This document shows positions 18,346 through 63,533 of a DNA stretch of 64,000 bases, one piece after another. A program made the translations under genes and the position numbers. Positions within the stretch are counted from its first letter, which is position 1, and every line of letters starts with the position of its first letter. The stretch lies in NCBI GenBank assembly GCA_024137785.1, contig JAHRHZ010000002.1:5076328-5140327 (forward strand), written 5' to 3'. The notes beneath the pieces are model-generated. The model was not told the DNA's origin, made no database searches, and saw only the letters and a list, made by a program, of their open reading frames with translations. The DNA comes from Ginglymostoma cirratum (lineage: Eukaryota).

Positions 18346-18381
18346 TGAATCATGAAAGAACTGGAACAGGGATATCAGAAG
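18346..18381 (-). pseudogene. MHC class I-like gene A, cytoplasmic exon 2 (SDIPVPVLS*)
   Basis: ttctcAG acceptor and GTAAGT donor; homologous to 29886-29921 and 35618-35654. Confidence 0.7.
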
Positions 18382-18677
18382 CTGAGAAAACAAATGTATT
18401 GTGAGAAATGAAACAAAATATCAAATTAGTGTGAGAAATTCTGTGAGGGGTAAGAGGATGAGGGAGTGGGTGATAGCAAGTTAATGTGCAAGGGATTTGA
18501 AGGAAACAGAGTGGCGAATGTGGAGATGAGGAAGAAGTGGAAAAAAGACTATGGTGTGATGGACTGGAGAGAGGGAGGTGGACTGTGTTACTGTGAGTAG
18601 CACCCAGGATGATGTAACTCTACAACTTCCAGTCATTTATTCATCATTCCTAATACTCTGTCCCCACAGTCACTTAC

Positions 18678-18709
18678 TGTGAGCTGTTGTGTAAGTCCCA
18701 TTGGGGAAT
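18678..18709 (-). pseudogene. Gene A cytoplasmic exon 1 (GTYTTAH-type), 1-nt deletion
   Basis: 32 nt between ctgcAG and GTAAGT; homologous to the 33-nt exon at 29463-29495. Confidence 0.7.
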
Positions 18710-20779
18710 CTGCAGAACAAAATAAATGTCCATTAGAATGGAGGATAATCCAATCTCAGAGAGTGAGAACATAACAAGCATGAGGAAATGGAGATTGTTT
18801 CAGAAATCCTCATTCCCGCACTTCCCTCTATCCTTACACTTTATGGAGATTCTGGAAATCTGTTTCATTCCTTCAATATTCAGTCAGGTGAGGATGTGAG
18901 TATGTTTGGTGGGTTTAATGAGCAAGATTATACCTGGTCTGGGCCGATCACACAAAGGAAGATAAGACAGGGAACAAGATGTGTTCATGCATGTGAATCT
19001 GTGTGTGGGAATTCAATCAGTTCCTGTCCGTGTTTAATCCCCAGGATTACATTGGATAGCCCAGGAGGCAGCGTCACTGATGTTTTTCACATCAAACCTC
19101 TAACGGATGAGGAATAAACTGACCACAGGAAACTGGGCTGGCCTGACAACGAGGAAAACAATAGAGAATCAGAGCAAACACTTAAAAAGAAGCATTTGGT
19201 TCAATCCAACCTCAGAACCTATTCCGAACTACTGCAGTGAACCCACTGAAGTCAAGACCTGAAATAAGTGAGAGATATCAGCTCAAAGAAAAGCTTCCAC
19301 AAATGTCCAGAGACTGAGGGAGAGACAGTTAGATAAGGATCAGCTGACCAGATTGTGGATGGATTTGTGAAGGGTAGCTCATGTCTGACTCATCTCATTG
19401 AATTTGATGAGGAGCTCACTAACATGGTGGATAAGGAATGTCTCTGGACTATTCTGTAAGGACTTCCGGAAGGTAATTGATAGTGTTCAACATTAGAAAT
19501 GATTGATAATAATGAGTGCATGGAATTCAAAACTGGAGAAACATACAAATCAGGATTAGGAGTCAGCCTTTCAGCCCCTGAGGTCTGTGCTGCTATTTGA
19601 TGACATTATGACTGGTCTGATTTTCACTTTGACTCCACTTTCCCTAATCTGTTGTTCAAGAATTTTTCTATTTCAGCCTTAAAAATATGAATGACCCTGC
19701 TTCTACTGCTGTCTGGAGAAGAGCATTCAATTGTCTAATGGACGGACAAGGTGGGGGGAAATTTTCTTCCCCATATTTTTAAATTTTGTCTCACTCCAGT
19801 TTTAGTCTCCATACAAGCATAGACATCAATTCCGTGTCCTCCTTTGCCAAGTGCCCTTGGGATATTACATTTTATAATAGAATCAAATTCATTCTTCTAA
19901 ACTCCAATCAATACAGATCCAGCCAGTCCAACATTTCCTCATATGATAACCATCTCTGGAGTCAGTCAAGCAAAAATTCACTGAACTCCTATTAATGCAA
20001 TACGTATTTTCTTGAATCAGGATGCCAAAATTGCACGTAGGGCATCAGACGTGTTCTAGCGAATTCCACAAGATATCAATATTTTAAACTCTATTCACCT
20101 TGTAATAGAGTTATTACCTTGTAATAAAAGGCAACATTCCATTTACCTTCCTCATTAAGAGCTTTACCTTCAAACTTTGGCATGGGTGAGAGTTTTTTTG
20201 GAAGGTAAAAGGTGGAGTCTTAGAATAAAGAGAATGTGTTCCCATTAACTGGATTTGATGCATTGGATTCTTGAAATCTTGAGAATACCGATAGAGCACT
20301 TTTCGTTCAGTCCAGTGACAGACCAGTCAGTAAAAGTCGAAATGGAATCAGACTGGCTTAATTTATGAAAGTAAGAATTAATTCAGACCCCAAAAGGTTG
20401 GGAAGGGATAGAGGACAGAAATATAGACAAATTTCAGAGTGTTATAAAAAGAGATTTCAACTTCCCTCATATTAACTGTAATAGACTAAGTGCAAAAGGC
20501 TCAGAGGAGGCGGAATTCTTATAATGTATCCAGGAGAGCTTTCTAAGCCAACATGTAGAAAACCCTACAAGAGAAGAGGCAGCACTGTTTTGAGTGTGGA
20601 AGCCAGACAAGTGGTACAGGTGTCAGCGAGAGGGCATAACTCTGTAAGATTTAAGGTAGTTACGGAAAAGAACAAAAGGATAAAGTTAGACCTGAAACAC
20701 AGGTTTGGGATAAGGCCAATTATAACATACTCAGACAGGATCCAGCTGTCTGAATATCTAATAACGATGAGTCGAACTA

Positions 20780-21570
20780 CAGAAGAGAAATTGAGAGCTT
20801 GGTGACATGGTATAATGAAAACAACCTATTTCTCAATGTTGGCAAATCTAAAGAACTGATCATTGACTTCAGAAAGAGAGGAGGAGAGCATGACCCCATC
20901 TACATCAACAGAACTGAGGTTGAGAAGGTGAAGAGCATCAAGTTCTTGGAGTGACGATAATGGACAACCTGTCCTAGACTTCCAATGTAGATGCGACTGT
21001 CAAGAAGGCACATTAACTCCTCTTCTTCCTCAGGTGGCTCAGGAAATTTGACATGCCCATGTCAAACACCAACATCTACAGATGCACTATTGAAGGCATA
21101 CTGTCCAAGTGCATAATTACTTGGTATGACAACTGTTCTGCCCAGGACCGTAAGAAACTACAGTAGGTGGTGCGCACAGCCCAGATCATCACAGAAGCCA
21201 ACCTTCCATCCATGGATGCCACTTTCAGGGCTCACTGCCGTGGAAAGGCTGCCAACATCAAAGACCCATCACACCCAGATGATGAACCCTATAACCCTCA
21301 TCCATCAGGCAGAAGATACAGAAGGCTGAACACATGCGCCAGCAAGTTCAGGAACAGCTTCTTCCTGGCTGTAATTAGACTGATGAATGGAGTCTCTAGC
21401 CTCAAATGACACTGATACTGCTAACATTGATCTCGCCCAGTGTAACCTGTAAGCCTCTATGTCTTTTTTGATCTGTACGTCCTTCGCTTACTATGATCTG
21501 TCTGTACCACTCAAACAAAACTTTTCACTGTATTTCAGTAAACATGCCAATAAATAAAATTTATCAATCA
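20780..21570 (+). mobile_element. Rex1/Babar-type LINE 3' portion
   Basis: WYNENNLFLNVGKSKELIIDFRK, LFFLRWLRKF, PSGRRYR..SKFRNSFF; aataaa/atca tail. Confidence 0.8.
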
Positions 21571-23246
21571 ATATGAAATGGATAGTGAGGAATTACTTGT
21601 TGGAAAATCTACATCAGAGCAGTGAAAGTCTTCCAAAGAGGAAATAGTGAGGGTGCAGGGCTGACGTGTTTCTGTAGACATGAAGAGTGGGCCTAGAAAT
21701 TCCTAGTGGTTGAAGAATGTTAAGGATTGTGTAAGGAACAAAAAGGAAGCTTATGGTCAGTTCCAGCAGCTCAGAACACTGGAAGCCCCAGAGGTGTCTA
21801 GGAAGTGCAAAGGGGATTACTGAAAAACATAATGAGGTAACTGTAGATGGGCATGGAAAAGCACTGCTGGCTAAATTTTATGGCATTTTATAAGCACATT
21901 AGCAGCAAATGGACTGTTTCCACATGTGACTAGTCTGTAATTGCTGAGTTTATCCTTAACACCTGTTTTAAACCAGCATCGGACACCTCCAAGTCTAAGC
22001 AAGACTGAAAACATATGGCTAGTGCTCCTGCAATTTCTATTCTCATCCCTCTCCGTATTCTTGGGTGAATCTCATCTGGCCTCTGTGCCTTATCAACCTA
22101 AAGTATCGTCAGTCTGAAAAATACCTCCTCCTTATCAATTGTAAATGCTGCTGGTGTGAGAATGACCTCCTCTATCACTATGCCTGAATAACATCTCCTT
22201 TTATGGTAATTACAGGTTAAAGCTGTTCATTTAATATCCTAGCCATGCCCTCGACCTCCATGTGCAAGTTCTCTTTTAGGTGACAAATCAGCCCCTCTTC
22301 TCCTTTTCCCACCCTGTTTACTATTTAGATGCCAAAGGAAGACTTTGAGATTCCCTTTATGTTGGCTGAGAGACTCTTTACATAATTACTGTTGCTTCTC
22401 TTCATTGCTTCCTTGTCTCTATTCTGCACTTCTGTCTTTAGTCTGGTTTCTAGCATTTCTCAAACACACTTTTTCTTCTCTAATTCCTATTTGTTTGTAA
22501 TAACCGTCTTTGACTGTTCATCAGTTTCCTCATAAGACAATCCATTCATCCCTGGGGTCAACTCAGTGAATTTTTTTCTGGATTGCCTCCAATGCCTTCA
22601 GATCGGGGGCCAAAACTGTTGATGATATTCCAACGTAGTATAACTAGAACTTGCACAATTTTAGCAAAACCTCCACATTTTTATACTCCATTTCCTTTGA
22701 AATAAATCCCTTGACCTTTTACTCCTTCAATGTGCTGCTTAAAACCTACCACCTTAACTGCATGCACTTTTGCAGACTGGTGTTAAATATTGCCCAATAA
22801 CATTCCTGTGTTTTGAGGCCATTCATGATATTAAAACAGCTAGATAAATGGAATCTGCTGTTGTTTTTCTGACTTTCCTCCTTGGGTTTATAGTCTTATA
22901 CCATCAAAAAATACTCTCCTTAATCAATAGCAACACCCTTCCTCCTTTTCTTTATTTAGTATATTTCCAGGAACTCATCAAGGGTTCTTAAACAGCAGCT
23001 TCAAGACCTGTATATTCTCCACCTTCCATCCATGGCAGGGTTAAAGTTCATGAACTTCATCGTTAACCCTACTGTGGATGTATCCATGGCACATTTACTG
23101 CAGTAGATCCAGAAGACAGCTCACCACTGCTGAAAGGCAACTATCGATGGAGAATCAACCTTACGAGCAATACTTTCATCACAGATGTAAAAACAACCCT
23201 CAATCTTGGGTATTCACTAACCAATCACAATCCTCTTTCAACCTGA

Positions 23247-23431
23247 GATAACATAATGTAAGCTGGAGGAACACAGGAGGCCAGGCAGCATCAGAGGAGC
23301 AGGAAAGCTGATGTTTTGGGTCGGGACCCCGAAATGTCAGCTTTCCGGCTCCTCTGATGCTGCCTGGCCTGCTGTGTTCCACCAGCCCCACACTGTGTCA
23401 TCTCAGACTCCAGCATTGGCAGTTCTTACTA
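23247..23431. mobile_element. Short palindromic Penelope-derived insertion
   Basis: Inverted arms; perfect 15-bp TSD cctctttcaacctga at 23232-23246 and 23432-23446. Confidence 0.88.
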
Positions 23432-23628: not shown

Positions 23629-23905
23629 CCCACTGATAGAGCTTGGCCTCTGGCAGGCTGCTGTGTTCAATTTGACAGGCGTGTTGATCCTCATCTCCAG
23701 CACTGATTTCAATCTCTTTCTGGATCTGATGTGTTCAATCATGGTTCGGTTGAACCCCTGAGGAATGTGTCTCAGACATGACCTCTCCATTCCTTAGCCA
23801 GGTCACCTCAATGTCTACAGGATAAAATCCAGTGACCAGGCAGGATGGAGTGAGCAGCTTGTCCTGGCAATTGGTCTCAAGTGGTGATGATCACTTCAGG
23901 CTGAT
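23629..23905 (-). pseudogene. Gene A alpha3 (Ig C1-set) exon
   Basis: QPEV..SCLVTGFYPVDIEVTWLRNG..QPNHD*THQ..ACQIEHSSL..YQW. AG/GT boundaries, 277 nt (frameshift near the 5' end), TGA at 23737-23735. Confidence 0.93.
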
Positions 23906-24000: not shown

Positions 24001-24275
24001 ATACCTTCTGAAATATTCATTTCCAGATTGCAAATATGAATGTAAAATCATAACATATACATCTTCCAAATTTATTTTCCAATATTTGTTCCAGGATTTA
24101 TTGTAATCCTATTTCTCCTTCAGCTTCACTGCAAAGTGATTTGGTGCGACCTATCTCATTCTGTCTGGCTGTAAACTGATGAAGTCCTTTCCATCAAATC
24201 CAAATCTCATCAATCTCTTCATAGAGCTGTCATCACTGACCTCAACAGAACATATCCAGTGGACAGTGTGAATTC
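24001..24275 (-). pseudogene. Gene A alpha2 exon
   Basis: GIHTVHWICSVEV..FGFDGKDFISLQPDRMR*V..KEK*D..SYLQSG. Two TAG stops at Trp positions (24153-24151, 24111-24109); donor out of phase. Confidence 0.92.
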
Positions 24276-25009: not shown

Positions 25010-27370
25010 CCGAGGATGTCCTCAACCACATTTCCCCCATTTCTGCACTTCTGCCCTCGAACTCTTCCCCCCAACGACATGAAGGATACAGCCCCCTGAG
25101 TCCTCACATACCAGCCCACGAACCTCTGTAGACAATGCATCATCCTCTGACATTTCCGCCACCTAAAATCAGACCCGACCACCAAAAAGATATTTCTCTC
25201 CCCATCCTTGTCTGCCTTCTGCAGGGACCGTTCACTCTGCAACTCCCTTGTCAGCTCCACACTCCCCACCAACCCCTCCACCACAACTTATTCCCTCCCC
25301 TGCAACTGCAGGACGTGCTACACCTGCTCCTACACCTCCTCTCTCACCTCCGTCCAAGGCCTCAAACAATTCTTCCAAATCTGACAGAGATTCACCTGCA
25401 CTTCATCTAACCAGATCTACGGTATCCATTGCACCCGATGTGATCTCCTCTATAGCAGGAAGACCAAACGCACACTCAGGGACTGTTTTGCGAAGCATCT
25501 GCGCTCTGCGCGCACCAACCAACCCAACCTTCCGGTTGCCACCCACTTTATCTCCCCCTCCCACTCCCCTTGTGACATGTCCATCCTTGGCCTCCTCCAT
25601 TGTCAGAGCAAGGTCAAATGTAAACTGGAAGAACAACATCTCATATTTCATCTTAGGAGCTTACAGCCCAATGGTCTGAATATTGACTTGACCAGTTTCA
25701 AAACCTTTCCTCCCCCAACCTGTCCATCTTCTGACTCATGTATCTGCTCCACCCTTCCCAATAAGCAATCATAATAACCTCCTACCTGCATCACCAGCTT
25801 CTAAATCTCTCCACTCCAAACTTGTCCATCTTCCTACTCACCTATCTGTTCCACCCTTCCCACTGACAAACCACAATAACCCCCTAACTGCATCCACCTA
25901 CCTCCATCTACCAACCCTCTTGCCAACCCTACCATCCTCGCTCTATTTCTGGGCTCCCCTCCCTCTCGCCAGTCCTGTTGAAGGGATTTGAGCTAAAATG
26001 TTGACCTTCCTGCTCCTCCAGTGCTGATGACCTGCTGTGTTTTTCTAGCTCCAGATTTATTGATTCTGGCTTTCAGCATCTGCAGCCCTGACTGTTTCCA
26101 TATACAAAGGATTGTCAGTAGCCACTCTGTCACTTTCAGACATGACCAGACACATATTCCCATTCCTTCCTTGTCAGCATTTTATAGTGATTGTGCTGGC
26201 TGTGGTACTCTGGTCTAGTCCTCCACCATTCCTAATACCATCTCACACTCCAACAGCATTTTCCTAAAAAAATTGCAGAAGGCATAACTTGTGCTTGTTT
26301 ACTTCCTCCCTCCTCAATATCCAAGGCCCCCAGGCACACCTCCCCGATAATGCAGCAATTCATTTGCAGTTAATTCAACCTGGCCTGTTGTATTCACTGC
26401 TCACAATGTGGTCTCCTCGACATGGGCAATATGAAATTCAGACTAGGTGACTGCTTTGCAGAACACCTAGGTTCTGTCTGTAAAAATGACCCTGAGCTTC
26501 CTGTTGCCTGCCACTTCAACACACTACCATGCTCCCACGCCGACATTTCTGTCACAGGCCTGTTGCAGGGTTCCAGCGAGCCTCAGCACAACTCAAAGAA
26601 CAGCAGCTCATTTCTTTGTCCTGAGGAAGGGTCATCGGACCCAAAATGTTAACTCTGATTTTTTCTTCACAGATGCTGCCAGACCTGCTGGGCTTTTCCA
26701 GCAACTTTGTTTTTGAGCAGCTCATTTTCTGCGTGGGGACACTGCAGCCTCTAGGACTAAACATCAAGGTCAATAACTTCAGAAACTAATTCCATTCTTC
26801 CATGTTCCTCCACACCCCCCGCCCCCCCACACTCGGTCCTGTTATGACATGATCTGTTCTGAGGAAGGGTCACCGGACCGTAAACATTAACTCTGATTTT
26901 TTTCTTAAAAACCGAAAGAACTGGGAATGGAGTTCACGGATGCTGAGCTTTTGCAGCAACTTCTGTTTTTGATCCTGTTATGATCTGGGTTGCTTTTAGT
27001 ATAATCGCTAATTCTCACCTCCACCTCACCCTGTCATCACATTATATTGGTTGCTTTCATGACCACCTCATCCATTCTCTCCTTCTCTTAGCTCAGATTA
27101 TTACTTAAACAGCTTGTCTTCTGTCCAGGCCTGCTATCCATCATCTCCTTGTTTACCTAAACCTTTCACATCTGTCTCTGGACTCCATTTCCACCTTCCC
27201 CAACCTTGTCTTTAGTATAAATACCACTCTTCCTACCTGCTAATAGTTCAAATGAAGAGACACTGGATTGCAAATGTAAACACTGCTTTCTTCCCACAGA
27301 CCCGCTGAGTTTTGCTTGCAATTTCTGTTTTAGTTTTAGATCTCCAGCATCCACAGCTCTTTGTTTTAAT
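25010..27370 (+). mobile_element. Adjacent and nested decayed Penelope-like 3' fragments
   Basis: GIY-YIG remnants (KLEEQHLIFHL.SLQPNGLNID; RLGDCFAEHL; LPVACHFN) and several terminal repeats. Confidence 0.8.
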
Positions 27371-28472
27371 TTATTTGTACTTTGAATATTTCTGGAGCGC
27401 TTCTTTACTTATCCTTACAGATCTTAAAGCTGCTCTTGATTCCAGTGGTAAGGAGGAGTGAAGCTATTTTTGTTAATGCTCTGCTTCATCAAATTTAGGA
27501 ACTGAGTGGAACAAAACTAAAGGCCAATATCTATAATAATTTTGTCTGGTAAGCCATGAACAGCAAACATAGATCAGAACTCATCCAATATTTGTTCAGT
27601 ATTAGTGTACTTTTACTTTGTTCTACTTTAAGTTGCTATAATGAGTATTAAGAAGTTGTTTTTCCCTCACACTAAGAACTGTATGACCTCTTTAACGTGG
27701 CCAACTTGGTTATATTGCATCATGGTTGCAATGAGGCTTCTGGCAGCTTTTTGTCTACTGTTTTGGCACAGAGTATGTCTGTGTGCCATTCATTCTGGAT
27801 TGCAGTCTATACCAGGCCAAAAAGCAAATAGCCATAGATTTTGCCACCAGCATTAATCCTATCATTTCCCAGCTATTTCAGGTCTGATAAAGGGTCACTG
27901 AAATTGAAACATTAGCTCTGCTTTCTTTCCACAGAAGCTGCCAGACCTGCTGAGCTTCTCCTGCACTTTCTGATTTTGTTTCAGATTTCCAGCTTTGTTT
28001 TAGTTCTTTGTTTTATTATGGTGACTGGATCTTCCCCTTCCCATTACAAGTTCCTGTCCAGTCCTGAGCAGATGTCCTGGACCCTCTTAATACACGGACA
28101 ATGGAGCCATTTGTGCTCACAGGTTCAGAGCATGGTGTCAATCACCCTCATGAGACTGTATTGCACTATATTCCTTCCTATTCCCCATTCCTGAATGGCT
28201 TCCTGGACCATGATGCAACAGTCACGTAGCTCATCTCACTGCAAACCCCAATCTCATCCAGACAAGCTGAAGGAACCTCAAACCTGAGGGACAATGATAA
28301 AGACTGAGGGTACTGACCTCTTACCTACCTCACTCACAGCATCGCTCTCCTATCCCTTAACACTGGCCAAATCCAATACTAAGAAGTGTGACTCCCTCAT
28401 AGGATCCATGAGCTGTTTTTTCCTGTCGAATGGAACATAGCCATCTGGCAGATCCCAAACTCTATCAGTACG

Positions 28473-28551
28473 GTGTGTGCGTGTGCACGTGTGTGTGTGT
28501 GTGTGCGTGCATGTGTGGTGTCTATGTGTGCGTGTGCATGTGCGTGTGTGT
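28473..28551. repeat. Imperfect (TG)n microsatellite
   Basis: Visible dinucleotide run. Confidence 0.9.
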
Positions 28552-28973
28552 CCCCCAGTGAGGCCCTGTCCAATCTATCATGTACGCCCCCAAAAACCTG
28601 CCGATCGCAGGCTGGAAGCACTCAATGGTCCCTCAGCACTTGCAGCATTTTGGTGAGAGTTCCAGATTTACACCCCCATTTCTGTGCATTTCTGTGAAGA
28701 AGAGCTTTCTGGTTTCACTCCAAAATGACCTCACTCTAATTTGATGATGGTTCTCTCGTATCCCAGATTCCGGCACCAGATATTGTATACTTCCATTAAT
28801 GGGATGTTTTGAGACTTTACTGGAGAATGAAATCATGTGAGGATCAAACCAGCTTTTCAACCAATCCCATCAATTTCAAATGAACGGGTTTGTTTAAATC
28901 GTTCCCAATCAACACAAACTGGGAATGGATACAGGAACAGAGACAATTCTAATATTATTCCAACGTGTTTCAG

Positions 28974-29081
28974 AAATCCCAGAAAACAGTGTGGAACGTT
29001 CCCATCTTGTAATTGTAATTGGATTAGTCACTGCAGTAGCTACAATATTTGGAATAATCATCTGTAAAAGGCCCAGCAGAG
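28974..29081 (+). CDS. MHC class I-like gene B fragment, connecting peptide / transmembrane exon
   Basis: tttcAG|EIPENSVERSHLVIVIGLVTAVATIFGIIICKRPSR|GTAAAA; 108 nt, phase 1-1. Flanking introns align to 36040-36570 (reverse complement). Confidence 0.8.
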
Positions 29082-29462
29082 GTAAAATTCAGAGAGAGAG
29101 GAATGTAGAACTGAGGGGACCAAGTGAGTGTGGGGAATCTCCAGTACTAGGACTACAGGATACTGTGTTGAATGGAACTAATTGAATTTCCACACAGAGA
29201 TACACACATATAAATATACCTTGTTCTCAGTCTTTCAGGCCGGGTCTAATATTGACCATTAAGCTCACCACACACATTCACATCCTTACTGACTGAAAAT
29301 CGATGGAATGGGAGAGATCTCCAGAAGCTCCATAAAGTGTAAGCATGGAGGGGAGTGTGGGAATGAGGATTTCTTCCACAATCATCATTCCCTCACACTC
29401 ACTGTGTTCTCACTCTCTAAGAATGGATTATTCCCCATTCTAATGGACATTTATTTCTGCAG

Positions 29463-29495
29463 ATTCACCAAGTGGGACCTATGCAACAACTCGCA
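29463..29495 (+). CDS. Gene B cytoplasmic exon 1 (DSPSGTYATTR)
   Basis: 33-nt phase 1-1 exon, AG/GTAAGT; Tyr motif like the first class I tail exon. Confidence 0.75.
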
Positions 29496-29885
29496 GTAAG
29501 TGCCTGAGGGGAAGAACGTTGGGAATGATACAGAAAAGTTTGAAAAAGATATAGCATTACATTCACCTGAGAGTTGCTCAGGCTGACACATGTCCACTCC
29601 CCTTATCTCCAATCCCTCAACCCCCGGTCTCTTATCATACACATCCCGGTATCCCTACTTCCTCTCCTTCCAAAGTGCCCTCTTTAATCCCTCACTCTCC
29701 ATTCCTTATCCCCCAATCCTTTACCTTATAAGCCCTCAATCCCCATTCACTCACCATCCACTCCTGCACTATTCTGTTAATGTTGACAATGATTCTTTCT
29801 CACTCGCTGGATACAGGATAAAAATGTCACACTGTCTAATTTTATATTTTGTTCCATTTCACACATTCTGTTTTTATTTTCTCAG

Positions 29886-29921
29886 CTTCTGATGTCTCCG
29901 TTCAAGGTCATTCACGATCCT
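29886..29921 (+). CDS. Gene B cytoplasmic exon 2 (TSDVSVQGHSRS)
   Basis: 36-nt exon, ttctcAG/GTAAGA; Ser-rich like class I tails. Confidence 0.72.
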
Positions 29922-30087
29922 GTAAGAGATATTTTAGCTTTCCTTCACTGAGTTATTTTTAAGATTTTCACTCCCCTTCTGAGCCTGTCTCATCCTCCCA
30001 GACACTGTTAAAACCTGTCAGACTACTTTCACTCCCCTCCGCACATTGAAGTGATTCCCTTTTGTCTGTCCATTTCTTATCTCGTAG

Positions 30088-32890: not shown

Positions 32891-33302
32891 TTGCCATTGT
32901 TCAGCACTGTCTAGCACAAACATCCTGTAAGCTCTATTTGCTGCTGAACTAAAATATGCCTTGTTTTCCTCTCCATCTCCAAAGCTCTTCTGTCTGATTT
33001 CCTGGGGGAGGGAGAGGGATTTTCTCCATCTCAATGTCCAAATCCATTAGCCCCCAGCTACTTTCGAGCTGCCCGGCAGCTGGAGTTGGAGTTTCCTCAA
33101 GTGCTCCATGAGGCCGGGCTCCAGTCACATCCATGTTGGGACCCTCCATTTCATCGATTTCTGGCACCATCTGTTCTGTGGGCTGAAGGGACCGTGCTTC
33201 CTGCAGGGGAACGTTGTACAGCATGCTCCAGAGCCACACAATCCTTGAGACATTAATAGGAGAGAAGTGCAAAGTGATCCCTGACCTGTTCACAATTTGG
33301 GA

Positions 33303-33880
33303 TAGTAGGAACTGCAGATGCTGGAGAATCTGAGATGACAAGGCGTAGAGCTGGATGAACACAGCAGGCCAAGCAGCGCCATAGGAGCAGGAAAGCTTGA
33401 CGTTTCAGGCCTAGACCCTTCTTCANNNNNNNNNNNNNNNNNNNNNNNNNNNNNNNNNNNNNNNNNNNNNNNNNNNNNNNNNNNNNNNNNNNNNNNNNNN
33501 NNNNNNNNNNNNNNNNNNNNNNNNNNNNNNNNNNNNNNNNNNNNNNNNNNNNNNNNNNNNNNNNNNNNNNNNNNNNNNNNNNNNNNNNNNNNNNNNNNNN
33601 NNNNNNNNNNNNNNNNNNNNNNNNNNNNNNNNNNNNNNNNNNNNNNNNNNNNNNNNNNNNNNNNNNNNNNNNNNNNNNNNNNNNNNNNNNNNNNNNNNNN
33701 NNNNNNNNNNNNNNNNNNNNNNNNNNNNNNNNNNNNNNNNNNNNNNNNNNNNNNNNNNNNNNNNNNNNNNNNNNNNNNNNNNNNNNNNNNNNNNNNNNNN
33801 NNNNNNNNNNNNNNNNNNNNNNNNNTCCTATGATGCTGCTTGGCCTGCTGTGTTCATCCAGCTCTTACACCTTGTTATCT
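33303..33880. mobile_element. Palindromic Penelope-derived insertion containing a 400-N gap (33426-33825)
   Basis: Inverted arms; near-TSD cacaatttggga/cataatctggga at 33291-33302 and 33881-33892. Confidence 0.8.
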
Positions 33881-35654: not shown

Positions 35655-35906
35655 CTGAGAAAATAAAAACAGATTGTAAGCGCTGTAATAAAATATAAAA
35701 ACAGAGAGTGTGAGATATTCTCTATCACTCTCTGGGCCCAGGATTCAATCAACTTCCTGACCTTAACTAAACAGACTCACACAGCGCAGAGGGAGTGGAG
35801 GGTGAGGGTCCCAAGTGAACCTCACAGTTTTATTCCCAGGAGAATGTAATTCTACACCTTCCAATCCACCCTAATCATTCCCAACACTGTTCCCTCAGTT
35901 GCTTAC

Positions 35907-35942
35907 TGTGAGCTGTTGTGTAGGTCCCATTTGGTGAATTAA
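35907..35942 (-). CDS. Gene C cytoplasmic exon 1 (NSPNGTYTTAH in the ancestral frame)
   Basis: 36-nt exon, tttcAG/GTAAGC. Confidence 0.72.
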
Positions 35943-36260
35943 CTGAAACAAAATAAATGTCCATTAGAATAATCCATTCTCTGAGAGAGAGAACACAACA
36001 AATGTGAGGGAATGGAGATTTATATTCAGTCAGTGAGGATGTGTGTGTGTGGTGGATTTAATGATCAATATTAGACCTGGTCTGGGCCAATCACACAAAG
36101 GAAAATCAGACAGGAAACAAGATGTGTTTATATATGTGTATATGTTTGTGGGAATTCAATCAGTTCCATTCAGCACAGTGCCCTGTACTTCCAGTACTGG
36201 AGACTCCCCCACACTCACCCTGTCCCCTCAGTTATACATTAGCCTCTCCCTGTTTCTTAA

Positions 36261-36380
36261 CTCTCCATGGCCTTTCCCAAATGATTATTCTGATTATCCC
36301 AAAAATAACAGCCAGTAGAATGATCATTGACGCAATGACACTTCTAAGATGGGAGTGTCCCGAGTTGTTTCCCAGTATTT
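36261..36380 (-). CDS. Gene C transmembrane exon
   Basis: EILGNNSGHSHLRSVIASMIILLAVIFGIIRIIIWERPWR. The expected phase-1 donor reads TT; a GT lies 1 nt upstream. Confidence 0.8.
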
Positions 36381-38700
36381 CTGAAACAGAATGGAATAAT
36401 ATCAGGGTTGTCTCTGTTTCCAGATCCATTCTAGGCTCTGTGTTCATTGGGGAAAATTTTAACTGACGCCACCCATTGAAAATTGATGGGATTAGTTGAA
36501 ATACTGGTTTGACCCTCACCCGATTTCACTCTCCAGTGTCGTCACTAAAGATCCCATTGATGGGAGTAAACACTGCATTGCCCCAATCCTGGGGGTTACC
36601 TTCCCAGACAGTTCAGTTCCCATTCTCCCTGATGTCCCTGTGTGCTGCTCTTGCTCAATACCCGGGGTAAAATGGACAGCATCACTGGATGGTTTTCACA
36701 TCAAACTTCAAAGGGATGAGGAATAAAACGACTGCAGTAAAGTGAGCTCACTTTGTTCAATTTTGTAAGGTTATAAAGTGCCAATTAATGCCCTGATGAT
36801 GTAGTGGTGGTGTCCCTACGTCTGAGCCAGAGGAGAAAATACCGGAGTACTCAGCAGTTCTAGCAGTTTCAATGAAGAGGGAAATGTTCAGAAGTTGAAG
36901 AGATTTATATTGGAAGTGAAACATTGATTTTGTTTCTCTCTTTCCACAAATGATGCCAGACCAGCTGAGTTTCTGCAGTATTCTCTTTCTTCGAATAAGA
37001 ATTCAAACTAAGATTGTTTTATCAGCTAAAGTTGCGAAATCGGTGCCTCTTACTGAAGATGGGGGACTCAAGTATAACGATTATAGGCTCCTGAGGAGCA
37101 CGCAATCTTCCTGAAAGCTTATGGACATTTTAACGATAGAATTGTGAAAACAAAATTGGTTTTTACCAAATTCAGCACACATCCAGAGAGGAAAGAAGTA
37201 CAAGGAGAACTTGTCAGACCCTGCTTCATGCACATAAAGTGAGAGAGCTAGACCAACAGTTTACCTAGAGTCAGTGAGAGACAATGCCGCAGTCAATTAG
37301 AACAGAGCGCATCAAGGCTGTACTGAACTGAGTTCTAACTTTAACTGGACTGAGTTTTTTTTTGAATCAACCTGTCCAGGAATATTATGACACACCTTTG
37401 GAGCAGGTGGGACTTAACCCAGAGGTAGAGACACTACCATTGTGCCACAAGAGCCTTACCACCTTTTTTAATGCTTTGTGCTGATCCTGAAATATTTTAA
37501 TAAATCCTTTGGGATTGTTTCAACTTATTTACATTGTTCAGGAGAGGTCCGTGCTTGGTCATAAACAGGTATTTGGTCTAGATTTAAGGGAAACAACATT
37601 TCATTTTTGTTGACTGAGTATTGAGGCAAATTACAGTTCAGGCACTGCTCGTAAAGAAGTAGGATGGTACAATCCACCAAGAGCTTAGTCAAAAGCTACT
37701 GCAATTGGCCAAGGCATGGTCAGGGCATCAAGTAAGTGAGCGAATCCAGCTTAAAGAATGGCTCCCACAACTGTCCAGAGATTGAGGGACAAACGCTGAT
37801 ACAAGTCTCAGCTGATCAAGGAGAGAGTGGTTGGATTTGTGTAAGTGAAAACTGAAGTGTTAAGCTGGCAGTGAAATTGCTGTTGAATTGAGTATTTGTA
37901 AAAAGATAGCCTCGGGAAGCAAGATGAAATTTGTTTTAATATAAAGCATAGAACCATGGATACTGCAGATCTGAAACAGAGCAGAAATTGCTGGAGAAAC
38001 TCAGCAGACCTGGCAGCATTGGTGGAGAGAAATCAGAGCTAACATTTTGAGTCCAGTGACCCTTCCGAAGAAAACTCTGCTTTTTCTCCACTGATGCTGT
38101 CAGACCTGCTGAGTTTCTCCAGTAATTTCTGTTTCTGTTGAAACTTTGTATTGTTGTTTGTGTTAATATCTTTCTGTCTCAGTCATCTAATTTTGGTTCT
38201 GTTTCTTGTGTGCAATAAGCCTGTGTTCTGTTTATAGACGATCTGCAGGCTCATGTGAATATGTTTCGGTCTGTATCCAGCACTATAAATGATAAAAATA
38301 TTAAGCAAATGATCTATCAAGTCAGATTTCCTTTTAGGATACAACCTGTCTAATAGCTGAGATTATAATAACACATTGTTTTGTCCTTCGTATTTAAGGG
38401 GCATTCAGTTCCGATTGAGATGAAGAGAAAATTCTTACAAACAGTCATGTGAATCTTTGAAACTTTCGTACACAGGGCTATGCAAATGTTTACTGTGGAA
38501 TATCCTTAATGCTAGGACAGGGAGGTGTTTAGGTTGATCAGGGAATCAAGGCTCCTTAGAAGTAGAGAGGCAGGAGAATTCAACAATGATGACCAGCCAC
38601 AATCATGTTGAATACCAGAGTAGACTAAATGATGTACTTTGAATCGTTATGATGCTAAATGAAATTGTGGTGACAAACTCTTAACTTCATTGAATGGTGG

Positions 38701-38848
38701 NNNNNNNNNNNNNNNNNNNNNNNNNNNNNNNNNNNNNNNNNNNNNNNNNNNNNNNNNNNNNNNNNNNNNNNNNNNNNNNNNNNNNNNNNNNNNNNNNNNN
38801 NNNNNNNNNNNNNNNNNNNNNNNNNNNNNNNNNNNNNNNNNNNNNNNN
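38701..38848. other. Assembly gap (148 N) covering the end of the gene C alpha3 exon
   Basis: Run of N. Confidence 1.
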
Positions 38849-39111
38849 ATAGTGCTTAGCCTGTGCCAAACCGCCGTGTTCAATTTGACAGGAGTATTGA
38901 ACCCCATCTCCAGCGCGGATTTCAATCTTTTTATGGATTTGATGAGTCCCATCATGCTTCCCTGAGGATTGTATCTCAGACATGACCTCTCCATTCATTA
39001 GCCAGGTCACCTCGATGTCTACAGGATGAAATCCAGTGCCCAGGCAGGAGAGAGTGAGCGGCTTGTCCTGACGATTGGGCTCACTCCTGGAGATGAACAC
39101 TTCAGGCTGAA
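38849..39111 (-). CDS. Gene C alpha3 (Ig C1-set) exon, 3' end in gap
   Basis: VQPEVFIS..LTLSCLGTGFHPVDIEVTWLMNG..DGTHQ..YSCQIEHGGL; both Ig cysteines and the Trp present; cacAG acceptor. Confidence 0.93.
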
Positions 39112-39219
39112 CTGTGATGGGAAAGGGTGAAAACACAAACAATAGACAGACATGGAATGGTACGGGAGAGCGGTTTCATAGATCAGTGAAATTAGATCAG
39201 AACATGGGATCAAAAACTT

Positions 39220-41497: not shown

Positions 41498-41510
41498 ACA
41501 AAATAAATAC

Positions 41511-41801
41511 CATTCCTTTTGAAGTATTTCTTTCCAGCTTGCAAATATCTCATTAAATGCCGAACACAGACTTCTTCCAGATGTTCTTTCCATAACTTAT
41601 TACAGGGTCGAGCAGAATCCAATTTTTCCTTTATCTTCCCTGCATTGTTACCGGATGTGACCCATCTTATTCTGTCTGGCTCGAGGCTGATATAGTCCTT
41701 TCCATCAAATCCAAACCAAATTGATCTCTTCATGGAACCTTTCCTCATTGTATTGTTTTCATTCACCTCCACAATCCTAACCCATTGAAAAATATGAATT
41801 C
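41511..41801 (-). CDS. Gene C alpha2 exon
   Basis: GIHIFQWVRIVEV..FGFDGKDYISLEPDRIRWV..LEEVCVRHLMRYLQAGK; 291 nt, phase 1-1, AG/GT, no stop. Confidence 0.93.
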
Positions 41802-48055: not shown

Positions 48056-48058
48056 CAC

Positions 48059-48316
48059 TGATCTTCCTAATTGTCTGGTTTGTACTTTTCATCATTGTAC
48101 TCAGAAGGTGTTTTGCACTTTCTGATAGTGTCTTCGTGAGCCTTGTGATACATTTCCAGTATTCCACAACAAAAGAGTCTGCCGTGAAGTGCGGTCTAGG
48201 GATGGTCTGACTGATATCAGTGTCAAAATAATCAACCTGAAATCCATTTACCATTACAATGCTAGTAACTTCAGGCATATCATGAATGCCAGAAACTGGT
48301 GAAAATGCGTCAGTGA
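48059..48316 (-). CDS. Gene C alpha1 exon
   Basis: TDAFSPVSGIHDMPEVTSIVMVNGFQVDYFD..IPR..EYW..TNQT with the conserved N86 glycosylation site. tacAG acceptor; canonical donor lost, in-phase GTGTGT 9 nt downstream. Confidence 0.88.
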
Positions 48317-49239
48317 CTGTAAAACAAACAAGAGACAGGTTACTAGCCATTTACACAGATTACTACGTGCTTCAAGCAGGCCTCATCGACACCACGATAG
48401 TCTTCCATAATCCACCACTTTATCACACTGTTAAGGTCCTGTCTGATATTATAAACAGAAATATATTCAACTGGGTCAGAATTAGATGCTGCAGCCTCTC
48501 ATGAGTAGGAATTAAGCACTGAATCAGTCTGGCAATCTAGGGGTTGGAGAGTTAACACAGAAGATCACTAACCTGGAACAGGAACATGGGACGTATGCAG
48601 TACGGGATTAATCGAGATCTATAGCCTGGGATCTGTTATTAATCTGGAATACTAATCTGGTCACACCCTATCTATCACTAACCCGGAACAGGAACTGGGG
48701 TCTGTGAATGAATTTGTCATTGAAACTAAGAGAAACAGGAATATTTGGGAGAATAAAGTGTGAGACCATGGGGGACAATAATTGTGTGAATAGTCTGTCT
48801 GTCAAACAGAAGGATGGACAATCCAGTGCAGGATCTCCACTGTCCTTCACTGAGATTTTTAATCACCCCATTATACACCAGTAGGAAGTTGGTGGTGTGA
48901 GATAACCCGGCCTATTCAACCATGAGCTTGGGGTAGGTTAAACATGAAGTATCCTTCTTCTCCCTGCAGTGTTTACAAGACTTTACGCCAGGAGTGATGA
49001 AGCTGTTGGATTTGAATTGATGTGAAAATTAAAATTGCCCATTGGAACCATTTCCCATTTACTCCGAGCTTCTCTGATCTCAGGATTTCTACATCCTGAG
49101 AACTGGATACAAATCCCATCAGAGTCTCCCAGACTGTGCTGCCTTCAATGCGTAAAATATCAGGCTGGCTGTATAACAGATGGCCGATCAAACATCACCC
49201 ATTTCAAACTCTCACCAAGAGATTTACATTCACCCCAGT

Positions 49240-50750
49240 GGTAGGTAATCCTTTAAAGACAAGGTTTAGTGGACCTTACCAAACTGAAATGAAATTGTGT
49301 GGGTGAATTTTTTGATTAAATCGCTAGATAGAAGGAAAGCTCACAGAGTGTGTCATGCAAATATGAACATAGAACATAGAACAGTACAGCACAGTACAGG
49401 CCCTTTGGTCCACGATGTTGTGCCGACCTATTATCCTACTCTAAGATCAAACTACCCTGCATACCCTACATTTTACTATCATCCATGTGCCTATCCAAGA
49501 GGCGCTTAAATGTCCCTAATGTATCTAATGCTCAAAGGTATTTTGATAGGGAAGGAATGAAGAAGGAGAATGTGTTACAACTCAGAGTGAAGAACTAAAT
49601 TCAGATGATTCTGAATTTGATATTTCTCAAATTAAATTGGACAATGAGAATGTTCTTAAAAAGTGGGATAAATTATTGACTTACTTTCCAGAGGAAAATC
49701 AAAATGACTTAAATGAGTTATTACAATCACCTGGAGAGATATGTGCGAATAAGCTGGGAAGTCCTCAACTGATTCTGCATGATATCGGATATAGGAAATG
49801 CTGCTTCAACAGAGCAACATCCTTATAGAACTGAACGTCTAAAATTGCCACAGAATCAAAAAGAGATTGAAAGCTTGCTCAGAGACAACATAATTGAAGT
49901 GATTTGGAGCAAACAGAGCTCACCCATAATGATGGTGCCAAAACCAGATGCTGTCCAACGACTATGTGTGGATGATCACAAAGTCAATGCAATTACGAAA
50001 TTCGATTTGTATCGTATTCCATGGGTGGAAAACTCTACTGTGAACGTGGGAGAAGCAACTTATATTTCTAAGCTGAACTAACTCAGAGGATACTTGCAGG
50101 TACCTTTATCTGAAAAGCAAAGGAAATTTCAGCTTTCCTGACACTGAGTTTACCAGTTTAAATTCATGCCATTTGGTATGAAAAATGTGCCAGCCACATT
50201 TCAAAGACTAACTAATAAGGCCACTTTGGTATTACCCAGTTGTGTGGTGTACATAGATGATCTGGTGATTTTTAGTCACACATGGAAAGAATATTTAGAG
50301 CATCTGTTTGAATTGTTTGAATGACTTCAATAAGCAGGATTCCTGATAAGAACAAAGAACAAAGAACAAAGAAAACTTACAGCCCAGGAACAGGCCCTTC
50401 GGCCCTCCAAGCCTGAGCCGATCCAAATCCACTGTCTAAACCTATCGCCCAATTCCTAAGGATCTGTATCCCTCTGCTCCCCACCTACTCATGCATCCGT
50501 CCAGACGCACCTTAAATGAATCTACCGTGCCTGCCTCTACTACCTCTGCTGGCAACGCGTTCCAGGCACCTACCACCCTGGCTATGAGTAAGTTTGCAAA
50601 AGTCTAATCACATTTCTAGACCATATCATTGGACATGGACAGATGGCCCCATGGTTTGTGAAAACAAAGATTATTCTGGAGTTTTCAATACCAATGACAA
50701 AGAGGAAAGTGTGACAATGCCTGAGACTGAGTGATTTTTACTTTCAGGAC
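49240..50750 (+). mobile_element. Gypsy (Gmr1-like) pol remnant: integrase end followed by RT, with two nested CR1/SINE tails (~49345-49530, ~50348-50578)
   Basis: PLKTRFSGPY..HRVCHANM, then HPYR, SSPIMMVPKPD, RLCVD, MPFGMKNVPATFQRL, VYIDDLVIFS. Confidence 0.85.
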
Positions 50751-55073: not shown

Positions 55074-55125
55074 ATGTTGCTGATTCTTTTCTCCACCTCC
55101 CTGTATTTTTTCCTGGGTCTCTCCT
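55074..55125 (+). pseudogene. Orphan class I-like leader exon (MLLILFSTSLYFFLGLS)
   Basis: Homologous with its flanks to 57640-57755; 52 nt and phase 1 if the weak GTTGAG donor is used. Confidence 0.65.
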
Positions 55126-55789
55126 GTTGAGTACGGAATTCAGCTTTCCATTCTCACTCTCTGTTCTCCAGCTCAGGGTGAGAACAGAACTTTCGTGGAA
55201 TTTTACTTGATGGATTTGGTAGTGTTTCATGGGAGAACTGGTCTCTCTCCAGTCTGGGTCTGAGCCAGTTTAACAATCCCTCAGGGACTGGGGGCTCAGG
55301 TTGTTAACCCTCCCCGGAAGGCAGGGACATGAGCAGATTCACCCTTGATCTCTGGGCTGGTATTGAAAGCAACCAGGGATACGTTAAAATGAAATAAGAT
55401 CCTATTAATCAACTCCCAATGAGAGCAGAGTGCCAAGTGAAAGATAGCCATGATATGGAAGTACTGGTGTTGACTACTGATCAGTACATCAGGTGAAGTG
55501 TTGCTCATTTCACCTGATGAAGGAGCAGTGATCCAAAAGCTGGTGTTTTCAAATAAACCTGTTGAACAATAACCTGGTATTGTTTGACTTCCGACCAAGT
55601 GAAAGGGTGATGGGTGATTGTATTGGTAAGCAGCATTCCCACTCAGAGCACGGTACTGATAGGCAGCATTTTTAAAGCAGCCAAGGACTGCATTTACTTA
55701 TCACTTCCTGGTCTGTGTTGTACAATGTTCACTGACTCTGATTTTGAAAGTGAGCGAAGCTTGAGTCAAAAGAGAGAGAAGTTATAATA

Positions 55790-57675: not shown

Positions 57676-57726
57676 ATGTTGCTGATCCTTTTCTCATCTC
57701 CCTATGTTTTTTCTGGGTCTATTATG
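57676..57726 (+). pseudogene. MHC class I-like gene D leader exon, 1-nt deletion
   Basis: ATG...tatg|GTAAAT, 51 nt. Restoring one T gives MLLILFLISLCFFWVYY in phase 1. Confidence 0.7.
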
Positions 57727-58349
57727 GTAAATACAGAATTCAGCTTTCCAATCTCTCTCTCTCTCTCTGGGGTGAATGTGAGTTTCTTGGTGAGAGTTTG
57801 AAATGGGGAATGTTTGACCAGCCGCCTGTTACACAGCCAGCCTGATATTTTACACATTAAAGGCAGCACAGTCTGGGAGACTCTGATGGGATTTGCGTCC
57901 AGGCCTCCTGACAGCAAGATGCAGAAACCCCGAGATCAGAGATGCTCGGACCAAATAGGAAATGGTCCAAACGTATAATTTTAATTTTCACATCAATTGG
58001 GAGAAACCAACCAACTTCATCACTACTGGTCTAAAGTCAGTTAACACTATACGGAGGAGAAAGATTCTCCATGTTTAAATCACCCCAGGCTGAGCAGTGA
58101 TGCCCTCATGGTTGAATAGGTTGGATTATCTCTGACATCAACATCCTACAGGCCATGTACAAAAGGGTGATTAAAAAGGTCAGTGAAGGACAGTAGAGAT
58201 CCTGCTCTGGATTGTCCATCCCCTTGTTTGTCAGAGAGTCTGTTCACACAGTGACTGTCCCCTATGATCTCACACTTCAACTTCCCAAATATTCCTATCT
58301 CTCCTCATTTCAATCTGGATTCACTCACTCCCCATCTTTTCAGGTTATG

Positions 58350-59450: not shown

Positions 59451-59459
59451 AGACCGGAG

Positions 59460-62050: not shown

Positions 62051-62149
62051 GGACTCACTTTGACTACTAGGGCTGTAATGAGGTTCTGAGCATGTTATCC
62101 TGAAACCTTCACTCCAGATGTTCCTGATCAAGATTGTCTGCTCAACATC

Positions 62150-62405
62150 TTACCCAGCCTATTCCAGGTTAGTGATATTTATATCCCAGTTTACTGGTCT
62201 AGGTAAGTAATAGACTGAATGTATACCAGGTTACTGTTCCAGCTCAGTGATTGACCATGTATGTCCCAGTTTACTATTGCAGGTTAGTGTTAAACCAAGT
62301 GTTTGGTCCCAAGTTTCTGTTTCAGGTTAATTATAGACTTGGTGCATTCCAGGTTACTTTTCCAGATTAATGATAGACTAGGCATGTTCCAGGTTAGTGG
62401 TGGAT
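62150..62405. repeat. Degenerate ~40-bp tandem repeat in gene D intron 1
   Basis: Core ccaggttactgttccaggttagtgat; reverse-complement copies at 48560-48700 in gene C intron 1. Confidence 0.65.
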
Positions 62406-63273
62406 CTGGCAAGCTATTAAGGTGAAATCAAAGATATGATCTCAACAGGACATTTAAATTGCAGAGGGCAGTTGCTTTGCTATACCATTCACACTGACTA
62501 GCATTCAGTAAATGGAGGAATATAGGACAGGAGAGGAGATAAGTGATCAGTTACAACTCCAATTTTAATTCAAATCACTCATGCGAGTTACAAATTCCCA
62601 GTGACCAGTGTCCAATAATAGTTTGCACAGAGAGCTGGGCGCAGTAATTTTCCTTCCTGCAGGCAATGTGTTGGCATCTTTTGCAGCCAACAACAACTTG
62701 GAGAAAGTGAAGGAGGGTCTGAAGCCAGATGCTAATGTAGCCTGGAATCCTGCTCTCCCTCTGAAGGTCAAACAACAACTGACTGCGTCTCCCAGAGTTG
62801 TGTATTGAAGTAACTCACTAGTTCTGATTTCAGTCATTTCATTTATTAATGGGCCACCTCACTGAGCTTGTACATTAAGCAAACAAATCACCTCTCCATC
62901 AGAGTTCCATTGAAAGGCAACAAGGTAATTATGAAAGTATTAACATAACATTTGAATGTAGTGGGTCTCGATGTTTTTCTTTGTCCAGAGCTAGCTTGGG
63001 GTAGACAGATAGTCTCCAAGTCCTTTGTGTCAGTTTTCGTGGAACATTTACACACTTCAGGGAAACAACATCCTCTGGTAATATGATCGTGTGATCACCT
63101 TGGCCATTCTATGCTTCACCAAGGTCGTCCATTTTTGAAAGAAGCAGCATTTAAATGCAAAATCAGAAGAGAATATAGATTTTTGGTGCATTTTTCTTCA
63201 CAGACCCTCCTTGACAATTCTTATGGATCTGAAATTGGAGTTTAACATATCTCTTTAAGTGTTTGCATCACAG

Positions 63274-63533
63274 ACACTAACTCCCTCACTGTGATATATA
63301 CAAGAGTCTCCGGAATACAAGATTTCCCTGAGGTCACTGGTATTGTGAAGGTCAATGGAGACCAAAGAGGTTATTTTGACAGTAATATCCATAGCTGCCT
63401 ATCCAGGCAGCAGTTCCTGGCTGAATCACTCGATCTGAAATTCTGGGACAATGCCATTGATTTGGTGATCTTGCTTGCAAACTTAGCAAGGAGAATCTGA
63501 AAATCATCATCAAACGGACAAACCAGACTTCAG
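63274..63533 (+). pseudogene. Gene D alpha1 exon, 1-nt deletion near the 3' end
   Basis: cacAG|DTNSLTVIYTRVSGIQDFPEVTGIVKVNGDQRGYFDS..FWD..LA/KENLKIIIKRTNQTS|GTCAGA; 260 nt. Confidence 0.9.

What the first reader, a model, noticed from the sequence alone, without database searches (positions are those of the whole stretch)
18346..63533. Rearranged cluster of nonclassical MHC class I genes and fragments
Seen: parts of four genes in alternating orientation (A minus, B plus, C minus, D plus) plus an orphan leader and an orphan 3' flank within ~45 kb. By manual alignment to the class I consensus, several peptide-anchoring residues are replaced (Y7 to V in D and deleted in C; T143 to I/L; W147 to L in C; Y159 to H/N), while N86-Q-T and FDGKD are kept. 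Known: sharks have expanded nonclassical lineages such as UEA and UCA lacking these residues. Inference: a rapidly turning-over immune gene array, possibly an undescribed sublineage.
Basis: partly seen in the sequence, partly recalled or inferred. Interest (0 to 1): 0.8.

Follow-up and report, generated by a model that had tools for sequence, protein, structure and literature searches.

The report
Decayed shark nonclassical MHC-I gene cluster
This 45-kb stretch of a shark genome holds four broken copies and loose pieces of a known, shark-specific family of nonclassical MHC class I genes (most likely the UEA lineage), so it is ordinary debris of gene turnover and not a new kind of immune gene.

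Summary
The residue calls are also correct.

All pieces belong to one large shark-only family: 107 protein clusters in 13 shark species. It forms a well-supported clade apart from classical UAA and from UBA anchor sequences. By elimination this is the multicopy UEA lineage. No named UEA reference could be fetched.

The "undescribed sublineage" idea fails:
- C groups with a Chiloscyllium/Hemiscyllium gene and shares its 5-residue alpha2 insert.
- A groups with a whale-shark gene.
- D groups with bamboo and epaulette shark genes.

Every copy is defective:
- A has three substitution stops, a frameshift, and no leader, alpha1 or TM exon.
- B is only an alpha3 tail plus the TM and cytoplasmic exons.
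- C has open alpha1-3 exons but no leader, a 12-nt deletion in alpha1, two lost splice donors, and 7 changes at family-conserved sites in each of alpha2 and alpha3.
- D has frameshifts in its leader and alpha1.

Most "anchor losses" are typical of the family. W147 is the exception: it is invariant in the family and lost only here.

Neither gap breaks a reading frame, apart from the last ~7 nt of C's alpha3. Expression could not be tested. Earlier scan notes report similar disulfide-less class I genes 97-276 kb away in this genome.

The parts
18252..19024 (-). Gene A 3' end: cytoplasmic exon (about 18676-18705, 1-nt deletion) plus 3' flank. No TM exon was found upstream of it.
   Evidence: Self-blastn matches to B 29174-30025 and C 35835-36020. 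tblastn 'NGTYTTAHSK*'. No TM exon found. Sequence.
23629..23905 (-). Gene A alpha3 exon, 277 nt: a 2-nt deletion (frameshift) and one in-frame TGA.
   Evidence: 7 changes at 48 family-conserved sites.
24005..24275 (-). Gene A alpha2 exon, 271 nt (not a multiple of 3): two TGG-to-TAG stops, one of them at W147.
28418..28472 (+). Gene B: only the last ~55 nt of an alpha3 exon, followed by a (GT)n run. No homology upstream of it.
28974..29081 (+). Gene B TM exon, open, with an intact GT donor.
   Evidence: 71% DNA identity to C's TM exon.
29462..29497 (+). Gene B cytoplasmic exon ('DSPSGTYATT'). 3' homology continues to about 30025.
33072..33206 (-). Open stretch 67% identical to the C-terminal part of a basking-shark family member (P0005). 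Possibly the last exon of gene C, on the far side of the 400-N gap.
33426..33825 (.). Assembly gap (400 N) between the 3' ends of B and C. No coding frame crosses it.
35896..35940 (-). Gene C cytoplasmic exon ('NSPNGTYTTAHSK').
36261..36380 (-). Gene C TM exon, open, but the donor GT is changed to TT and there is an Arg within the TM segment.
38701..38848 (.). Assembly gap (148 N). It swallows the last ~7 nt and the donor of C's alpha3 exon.
38849..39111 (-). Gene C alpha3 exon, open over the 263 nt read, with a 9-nt deletion relative to the family.
   Evidence: 7 changes plus 2 deleted among 48 family-conserved sites.
41511..41801 (-). Gene C alpha2 exon, 291 nt, open, with the 5-residue insert shared with C. 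punctatum P0176. W147 is L.
   Evidence: 7 changes at 24 family-conserved sites.
48059..48316 (-). Gene C alpha1 exon. It has a 12-nt deletion in strand 1 (removes positions ~7-10). The donor at the family's position (after 48067) is GA instead of GT. A GT 8 nt downstream would keep the frame (258 nt).
48719..49238 (-). Intron-1 block upstream of C's alpha1, homologous to 57767-58314. The leader exon expected just upstream of it is absent.
   Evidence: No minus-strand leader anywhere in the window.
55074..55126 (+). Orphan leader exon ('MLLILFSTSL...FSWVSP'), 53 nt instead of 52 (frameshift). The donor GT is changed to TT.
57676..57726 (+). Gene D leader exon, 51 nt instead of 52 (1-nt deletion). 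The GT donor is intact.
57767..58314 (+). Gene D intron-1 block, 78-85% identical to the block upstream of C's alpha1.
63274..63533 (+). Gene D alpha1 exon, 260 nt. A 1-nt deletion near 63480 gives an in-frame TGA at about 63498. The rest of the gene lies beyond the window.

Best explanation
This is a graveyard segment of the shark multicopy nonclassical MHC class I family, most likely the lineage named UEA. It lies in the large MHC-Ib cluster of what is probably the nurse shark.

Shown: duplication and inversion left four copies in head-to-head and tail-to-tail order. Each copy is now disabled by truncation, stop codons, frameshifts, lost splice donors or a missing leader.

Inferred: transposable elements filled the introns, and none of the four copies makes a class I protein. 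The mechanism is birth-and-death evolution of a rapidly turning-over immune gene family. The unusual 'anchor' residues are partly the family's normal make-up and partly neutral decay.
For: Family identity:
- Every exon hits MHC class I.
- The nearest proteins are 107 RefSeq clusters in 13 shark species. Rays reach only 36-37% identity.
- The family forms a clade with SH-aLRT 97 (alpha2) and 96 (alpha3). It excludes UAA anchors (6LUP nurse shark, Triakis) and UBA anchors (O19480, O19479).
- The literature names only two expanded class Ib families in sharks, UBA and UEA. It places UEA with UDA and UFA in the cluster next to MHC-II, b2m and brd2 (PMC12562908; PMC10751288).

Orthologues: C groups with C. 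punctatum P0176 and Hemiscyllium P0192; A with Rhincodon P0170; D with P0182/P0183/P0171.

Decay:
- A has three substitution stops, a 2-nt deletion and an alpha2 exon of 271 nt.
- B lacks everything before the last 55 nt of alpha3.
- C has no leader, a 12-nt deletion in alpha1, and GT donors lost after alpha1 and after the TM exon.
- D and the orphan leader are frameshifted.
- At sites at least 95% conserved in the family, C has 7 of 24 changed in alpha2 and 7 changed plus 2 deleted of 48 in alpha3. A has 4 of 24 and 7 of 48. The family median is 0.
- W147 is W in 88 of 88 family members but L in C and a stop in A.
- End branches in alpha3 are 0.14-0.17 against a median of 0.012.
- dN/dS between A and C in alpha3 is 0.69.
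Against: - No named UEA reference sequence could be fetched, so the name rests on elimination, the literature, and my memory of Almeida et al. 2021 (not held).
- C's three ectodomain exons are open, and a downstream GT could rescue the alpha1 splice in frame.
- Expression was not testable. The runs offered came from relatives or copies about 5% diverged, and only as contigs.
- Single-base indels in D and the two leaders could be assembly errors.
- The B/C orientation depends on a 400-N scaffold join.
Confidence: 0.8

Rival explanations
1. Gene C is a live, strongly derived family member. It would use a leader that was not recognised or is unassembled, and alternative splice donors. It would make a class I-like protein with a shortened first strand.
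For: The alpha1, alpha2, alpha3 and TM exons are all open. A GT 8 nt downstream of the lost alpha1 donor keeps the frame (258 nt). Family transcripts joining alpha2 to alpha3 exist in related runs.
Against: - No leader on the minus strand anywhere in the window.
- Two canonical donors are lost.
- The 4-codon deletion removes the core of strand 1.
- 7 of 24 and 7 (+2 deleted) of 48 family-conserved sites are changed, against a family median of 0. The invariant W147 is lost.
- No read at this locus's own identity level was seen.
Confidence: 0.08
2. The fragments are largely an assembly artefact: collapsed or mis-joined copies of a repetitive multigene region, with indel errors producing false frameshifts.
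For: There are two gaps inside the region. Some frameshifts are single bases, one of them in a T run. No public run holds more than 28% of the sampled words of the stretch searched (38849-41850).
Against: - The copies are only 70-84% identical, so they are not duplicated by mis-assembly.
- A's stops are substitutions.
- C's defects are a 12-nt deletion, base changes at donors and many amino-acid replacements.
- The A/B breakpoints lie inside one gap-free contig (11368-33425).
- Exon order and strand are consistent across the 148-N gap.
Confidence: 0.07
3. This is an undescribed sublineage of shark nonclassical class I.
For: Identity to the nearest annotated proteins is only 65-74% in alpha1 and alpha2.
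Against: Each domain nests inside the family, next to annotated genes of other orectolobiform sharks. C shares a diagnostic 5-residue insert with P0176. The low identity comes from long end branches on the window's copies, which fits decay.
Confidence: 0.04

Closest known systems
UEA, the multicopy shark nonclassical MHC class I lineage (Almeida et al. 2021, J Immunol 207:824, recalled from memory; cited in PMC10751288 and PMC12562908)
   Same: Shark-only and highly multicopy. It lies in the MHC-Ib cluster near MHC-II. It lacks most of the invariant peptide-terminus anchors, which are replaced by more hydrophobic residues (Y7 to V, Y159 to H/Q). It has several sublineages.
   Different: The copies here are pseudogenes and fragments, not working genes. 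Membership is by elimination, because no named UEA sequence could be compared.
UBA, the other expanded shark class Ib family (Bartl et al. 1997; O19480_HETFR, O19479_GINCI)
   Same: A multicopy shark class Ib family on the MHC chromosome.
   Different: UBA anchors group with classical UAA and keep Y7, C101 and C164. The window's domains fall in a separate clade with support 96-97.
Xenopus XNC (mhc1-uba) and mammalian class Ib clusters that evolve by birth and death
   Same: Large arrays of divergent class Ib genes interspersed with pseudogenes and fragments.
   Different: Independent expansions in other vertebrate classes. No orthology.

Membership tests
MHC class I heavy chain superfamily | Alpha1 and alpha2 (PF00129-type) plus a C1-set alpha3 domain, each on its own phase-1 exon, followed by TM and cytoplasmic exons | tested here: met
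   PDB matches are 5e-12 for alpha2, 1.5e-18 for alpha3 and 6e-5 for alpha1.
Classical UAA | Conserved peptide-terminus anchors (Y7, Y59, R/Y84, T143, K146, W147, Y159, Y171) and the C101-C164 disulfide; groups with UAA references | tested here: not met
   Y7, C101, Y159 and W147 are changed. The domains fall outside the UAA/UBA anchors in all three trees.
UEA | Shark-restricted, highly multicopy family | tested here: met
   107 clusters in 13 shark species, with 10-20 clusters per species in several (isoforms included). Rays reach only 36-37% identity.
UEA | Loss of the invariant peptide-binding anchors across the family | tested here: met
   Family-wide counts: Y7 is V in 56 members; C101 is V in 80; Y159 is H, Q or Y; R84 is variable. 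K146, W147 and N86 are kept.
UEA | Location in the large MHC-Ib cluster next to MHC-II, b2m and brd2 | tested here: inconclusive
   The window holds no framework gene. Earlier scan notes (unchecked) place an MHC-II beta gene 751 kb before it and CD1-like class I genes 0.5-0.8 Mb after it.
UEA | Groups with named UEA reference sequences in a phylogeny | not testable with these tools
   No named UEA sequence came up in the protein searches, and the describing papers are not held. The supplement that lists query sequences is not held; the held workbook covers files 1-9 and was cut when stored.

The most novel reading that the evidence does not exclude
Gene C is not dead. It would be a live, radically remodelled class I-like molecule: first strand shortened by four residues, family-invariant W147 replaced, an arginine inside the TM segment. 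It would be expressed from an unrecognised leader through non-canonical donors. If so, it would be a ligand-free class I-like receptor that pairs with a signalling adaptor.
Probability: 0.05. Interest if true: 0.5.

Novelty: new member of a known kind. Interest (0 to 1): 0.2.

Why it matters
It matters little on its own. It documents, at base resolution, how a shark class Ib array decays: truncations, inversions, lost donors and likely transposon-filled introns. It also shows that most 'missing anchor' residues are family traits, so such calls should not be read as new lineages. It may help annotators mask pseudogenes in the nurse-shark MHC-Ib region. It also gives a neutral yardstick for rates in the family.

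Tried and rejected
I could not place white-shark family members on the published MHC-Ib map.
- The papers describing UEA and UDA are not held. A literature search for PDB codes and UEA or UFA names gave nothing useful.
- RNA test. The only holders were contigs of relatives or copies about 5% diverged. RNA-type contigs touched only conserved parts of alpha3 and alpha2, so the test says nothing about gene C.
- A leader-like stretch at 27967-28014 near B was rejected. It has no ATG and follows a motif that recurs elsewhere in the window, so I read it as a repeat tail.
- Assembly duplication was rejected because copy identity is 70-84%.
- A TM exon for gene A was sought and not found.
All searches and trees were exon by exon.
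- The gaps were not filled, and no letters from reads overhanging them are reported.
Full report
**What is there.**
The window has three N runs: 10968-11367, 33426-33825 and 38701-38848. Three open minus-strand ORFs were used as tblastn queries. With PDB searches they showed MHC class I alpha1, alpha2 and alpha3 exons (PDB E-values 6e-5, 5e-12 and 1.5e-18). A self-comparison of the window and tblastn with related shark proteins gave this map.

- Gene A (minus): alpha2 24005-24275, alpha3 23629-23905, cytoplasmic exon and 3' flank 18252-19024.
- Gene B (plus): the last ~55 nt of alpha3 (28418-28472), TM exon 28974-29081, cytoplasmic exon 29462-29497.
- Gene C (minus): alpha1 48059/48067-48316, alpha2 41511-41801, alpha3 38849-39111, TM 36261-36380, cytoplasmic exon 35896-35940.
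- Gene D (plus): leader 57676-57726 and alpha1 63274-63533. The rest lies beyond the window.
- A further, orphan leader at 55074-55126 (plus).

The copies are 70-84% identical in DNA, so they are old paralogues and not assembly duplicates.

**The gaps.**
The 148-N gap starts 7 nt before the expected end of C's alpha3 exon, judged from A and B, which read CAG TGG/TAC G|GT there. The last two codons and the donor are therefore unread. The TM and cytoplasmic exons follow on the same strand and in the right order beyond the gap, which supports the join.

The 400-N gap lies in non-coding DNA between the 3' ends of B and C, and no frame crosses it. The B/C relative orientation depends on this scaffold join. 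There is modest support for the join. A minus-strand open stretch at 33072-33206 resembles the C-terminal exon of a basking-shark family member (P0005, 67% identity). It would fit as C's last exon. I did not fill either gap.

**Which family.**
An HMMER scan of 1.84 billion representatives with C's alpha2 exon gave shark proteins as the best single-domain hits, at 53-56% identity. A word search with one of them (P0006) returned 107 clusters from 13 shark species. The genera are Heterodontus, Scyliorhinus (two species), Mustelus, Carcharodon, Cetorhinus, Stegostoma, Chiloscyllium (two species), Hemiscyllium, Rhincodon, Heptranchias and Pristiophorus. All were auto-named 'F10 alpha chain-like'. 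Rays appeared only at 36-37% identity.

A second search supplied anchor sequences:
- nurse-shark UAA (6LUP) and Triakis UAA;
- Heterodontus O19481;
- the 1997 Heterodontus and Ginglymostoma entries O19480 and O19479, which I take, partly from memory, to be UBA. They group with a multicopy Mustelus set.

In domain-wise maximum-likelihood trees the window's family is a clade with SH-aLRT 97 (alpha2) and 96 (alpha3). It excludes all these anchors.

The open literature says sharks have two expanded class Ib families. UBA is derived from UAA. UEA is more ancient (PMC12562908). UEA (multicopy) lies with UDA and UFA in the large Ib cluster next to MHC-II, b2m and brd2 (PMC10751288). By elimination the family is UEA.

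This fits my recollection of Almeida et al. 2021: shark-only, very large, anchors replaced by hydrophobic residues, three sublineages. That paper is not held, and no named UEA sequence could be compared. No family member has a solved structure; the best PDB matches are generic class I.

**Not a new sublineage.**
- C's alpha1 lies in a starred clade (95) with Hemiscyllium P0168 and P0192 and C. punctatum P0176/P0206/P0207.
- C's alpha2 is sister to P0176/P0207 (support 90). It shares their 5-residue insert (NENNTMRKGS against NEDDKVRKSS) and the retained C164.
- A's alpha2 is sister to Rhincodon P0170 (85).
- D's alpha1 is sister to C. punctatum P0182/P0183 and Hemiscyllium P0171/P0205 (85).
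- Alpha3 is unresolved within the family.

Identity to these partners is low (65-74%) because the window's copies sit on long end branches. These are 0.35-0.48 in alpha1 and alpha2 against medians near 0.1, and 0.14-0.17 in alpha3 against 0.012.

**The residues.**
Across about 88 family sequences:
- position 7 is V in 56;
- C101 is V in 80;
- Y159 is H (33), Q (20) or Y (18);
- T143 is T (63), I (13) or L (4);
- C164 is mostly L, F or Y;
- K146, N86 and Y171 are largely kept;
- W147 is W in 88 of 88.

The window departs from the family exactly where decay would show. W147 is L in C and a stop in A.

**All copies are defective.**
- A: two TGG-to-TAG stops in alpha2; an alpha2 exon of 271 nt; a 2-nt deletion and a TGA in alpha3; a 1-nt deletion in the cytoplasmic exon; no leader, alpha1 or TM exon.
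- B: nothing upstream of the alpha3 tail.
- C:
  - It has no leader. The intron-1 block that follows D's leader is present upstream of C's alpha1, but the leader position holds unrelated sequence. No leader-like start exists on the minus strand of the window.
  - A 12-nt deletion removes four residues of strand 1, including position 7.
  - The alpha1 donor at the family's position is GA. A GT 8 nt further on would keep the frame.
  - The TM exon's donor is TT.
  - Alpha3 has a 9-nt deletion.
- D: a 1-nt deletion in the leader, and a 1-nt deletion near 63480 in alpha1 that gives a TGA.
- Orphan leader: one extra T, and GT changed to TT at the donor.

At columns at least 95% conserved in the family, the counts of changed sites are:

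| Copy | alpha2 (24 sites) | alpha3 (48 sites) |
|---|---|---|
| C | 7 | 7, plus 2 deleted |
| A | 4 | 7 |
| Family median | 0 | 0 |
| Family 90th percentile | 1 | 2 |

dN/dS between A and C is 0.69 in alpha3.

**Expression.**
The one run search offered only runs holding at most 28% of the sampled words. Laid contigs differed by about 5% from the window. RNA-type contigs touched only conserved parts of alpha3 and alpha2, with alpha2-alpha3 joints that fit paralogues or orthologues. This neither shows nor excludes transcription of C.

**Context.**
Earlier notes of this scan are unchecked. They call the genome nurse shark. They place an MHC-II beta gene 751 kb before the window, similar disulfide-less class I genes 97-276 kb before it, and CD1-like (UFA/UGA-type) genes 0.5-0.8 Mb after it. 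This fits the published position of the UEA cluster.

**Limits.**
All work was exon by exon.

**Verdict.**
There is no new sublineage. It is a decayed corner of a known shark class Ib family.

Noticed in passing
window 48719-49238 (-) and 57767-58314 (+): The intron-1 blocks of C and D are 78-85% identical in DNA. Their alpha1 exons share only 39% of residues and fall in different sublineages. This points to exon-level divergence, exon shuffling or conversion between sublineages, or else to a shared repeat.
   Followed up: partly
window, A versus C and C versus D exons: Synonymous distance between paralogues rises from alpha3 (dS 0.21) to alpha2 (0.69) to alpha1 (1.28). Alpha3 appears to be homogenised within the family.
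   Followed up: partly
window 33072-33206 (-): An open stretch 67% identical to the C-terminal tail of a basking-shark family isoform (P0005), just left of the 400-N gap. It may be a conserved last exon of this family.
   Followed up: partly
window 6629-6806, 15183-15352, 23243-23406, 37975-38139: Four palindromic elements of ~170-180 nt, each matching its own reverse complement at 75-86%. They form two related pairs and look like MITE-type hairpin repeats. Two of them sit in introns or flanks of A and C.
   Followed up: no
window 40365-41026, 25046-25715, 12461-12975; 46222-46566; 4011-4816; 49779-50081: Transposon relics in and around the genes: three copies of an element with a GIY-YIG-like ORF (Penelope-like, by eye), LINE-type reverse-transcriptase fragments, and an LTR-retroelement-like fragment. 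C's introns 2 and 3 are inflated by them.
   Followed up: no
window 36261-36380 (-): C's TM segment carries an Arg (GIIRIIIW) where its C. punctatum relative has Gly.
   Followed up: no
proteins P0006, P0115-P0122: One sublineage of the family looks like a single, well-conserved gene per species (78-87% identity from Heterodontus to Carcharodon and Heptranchias). The rest of the family is much more variable.
   Followed up: no
window 28473-28560 (+): A (GT)n microsatellite begins exactly at the donor of B's alpha3 remnant.
   Followed up: no
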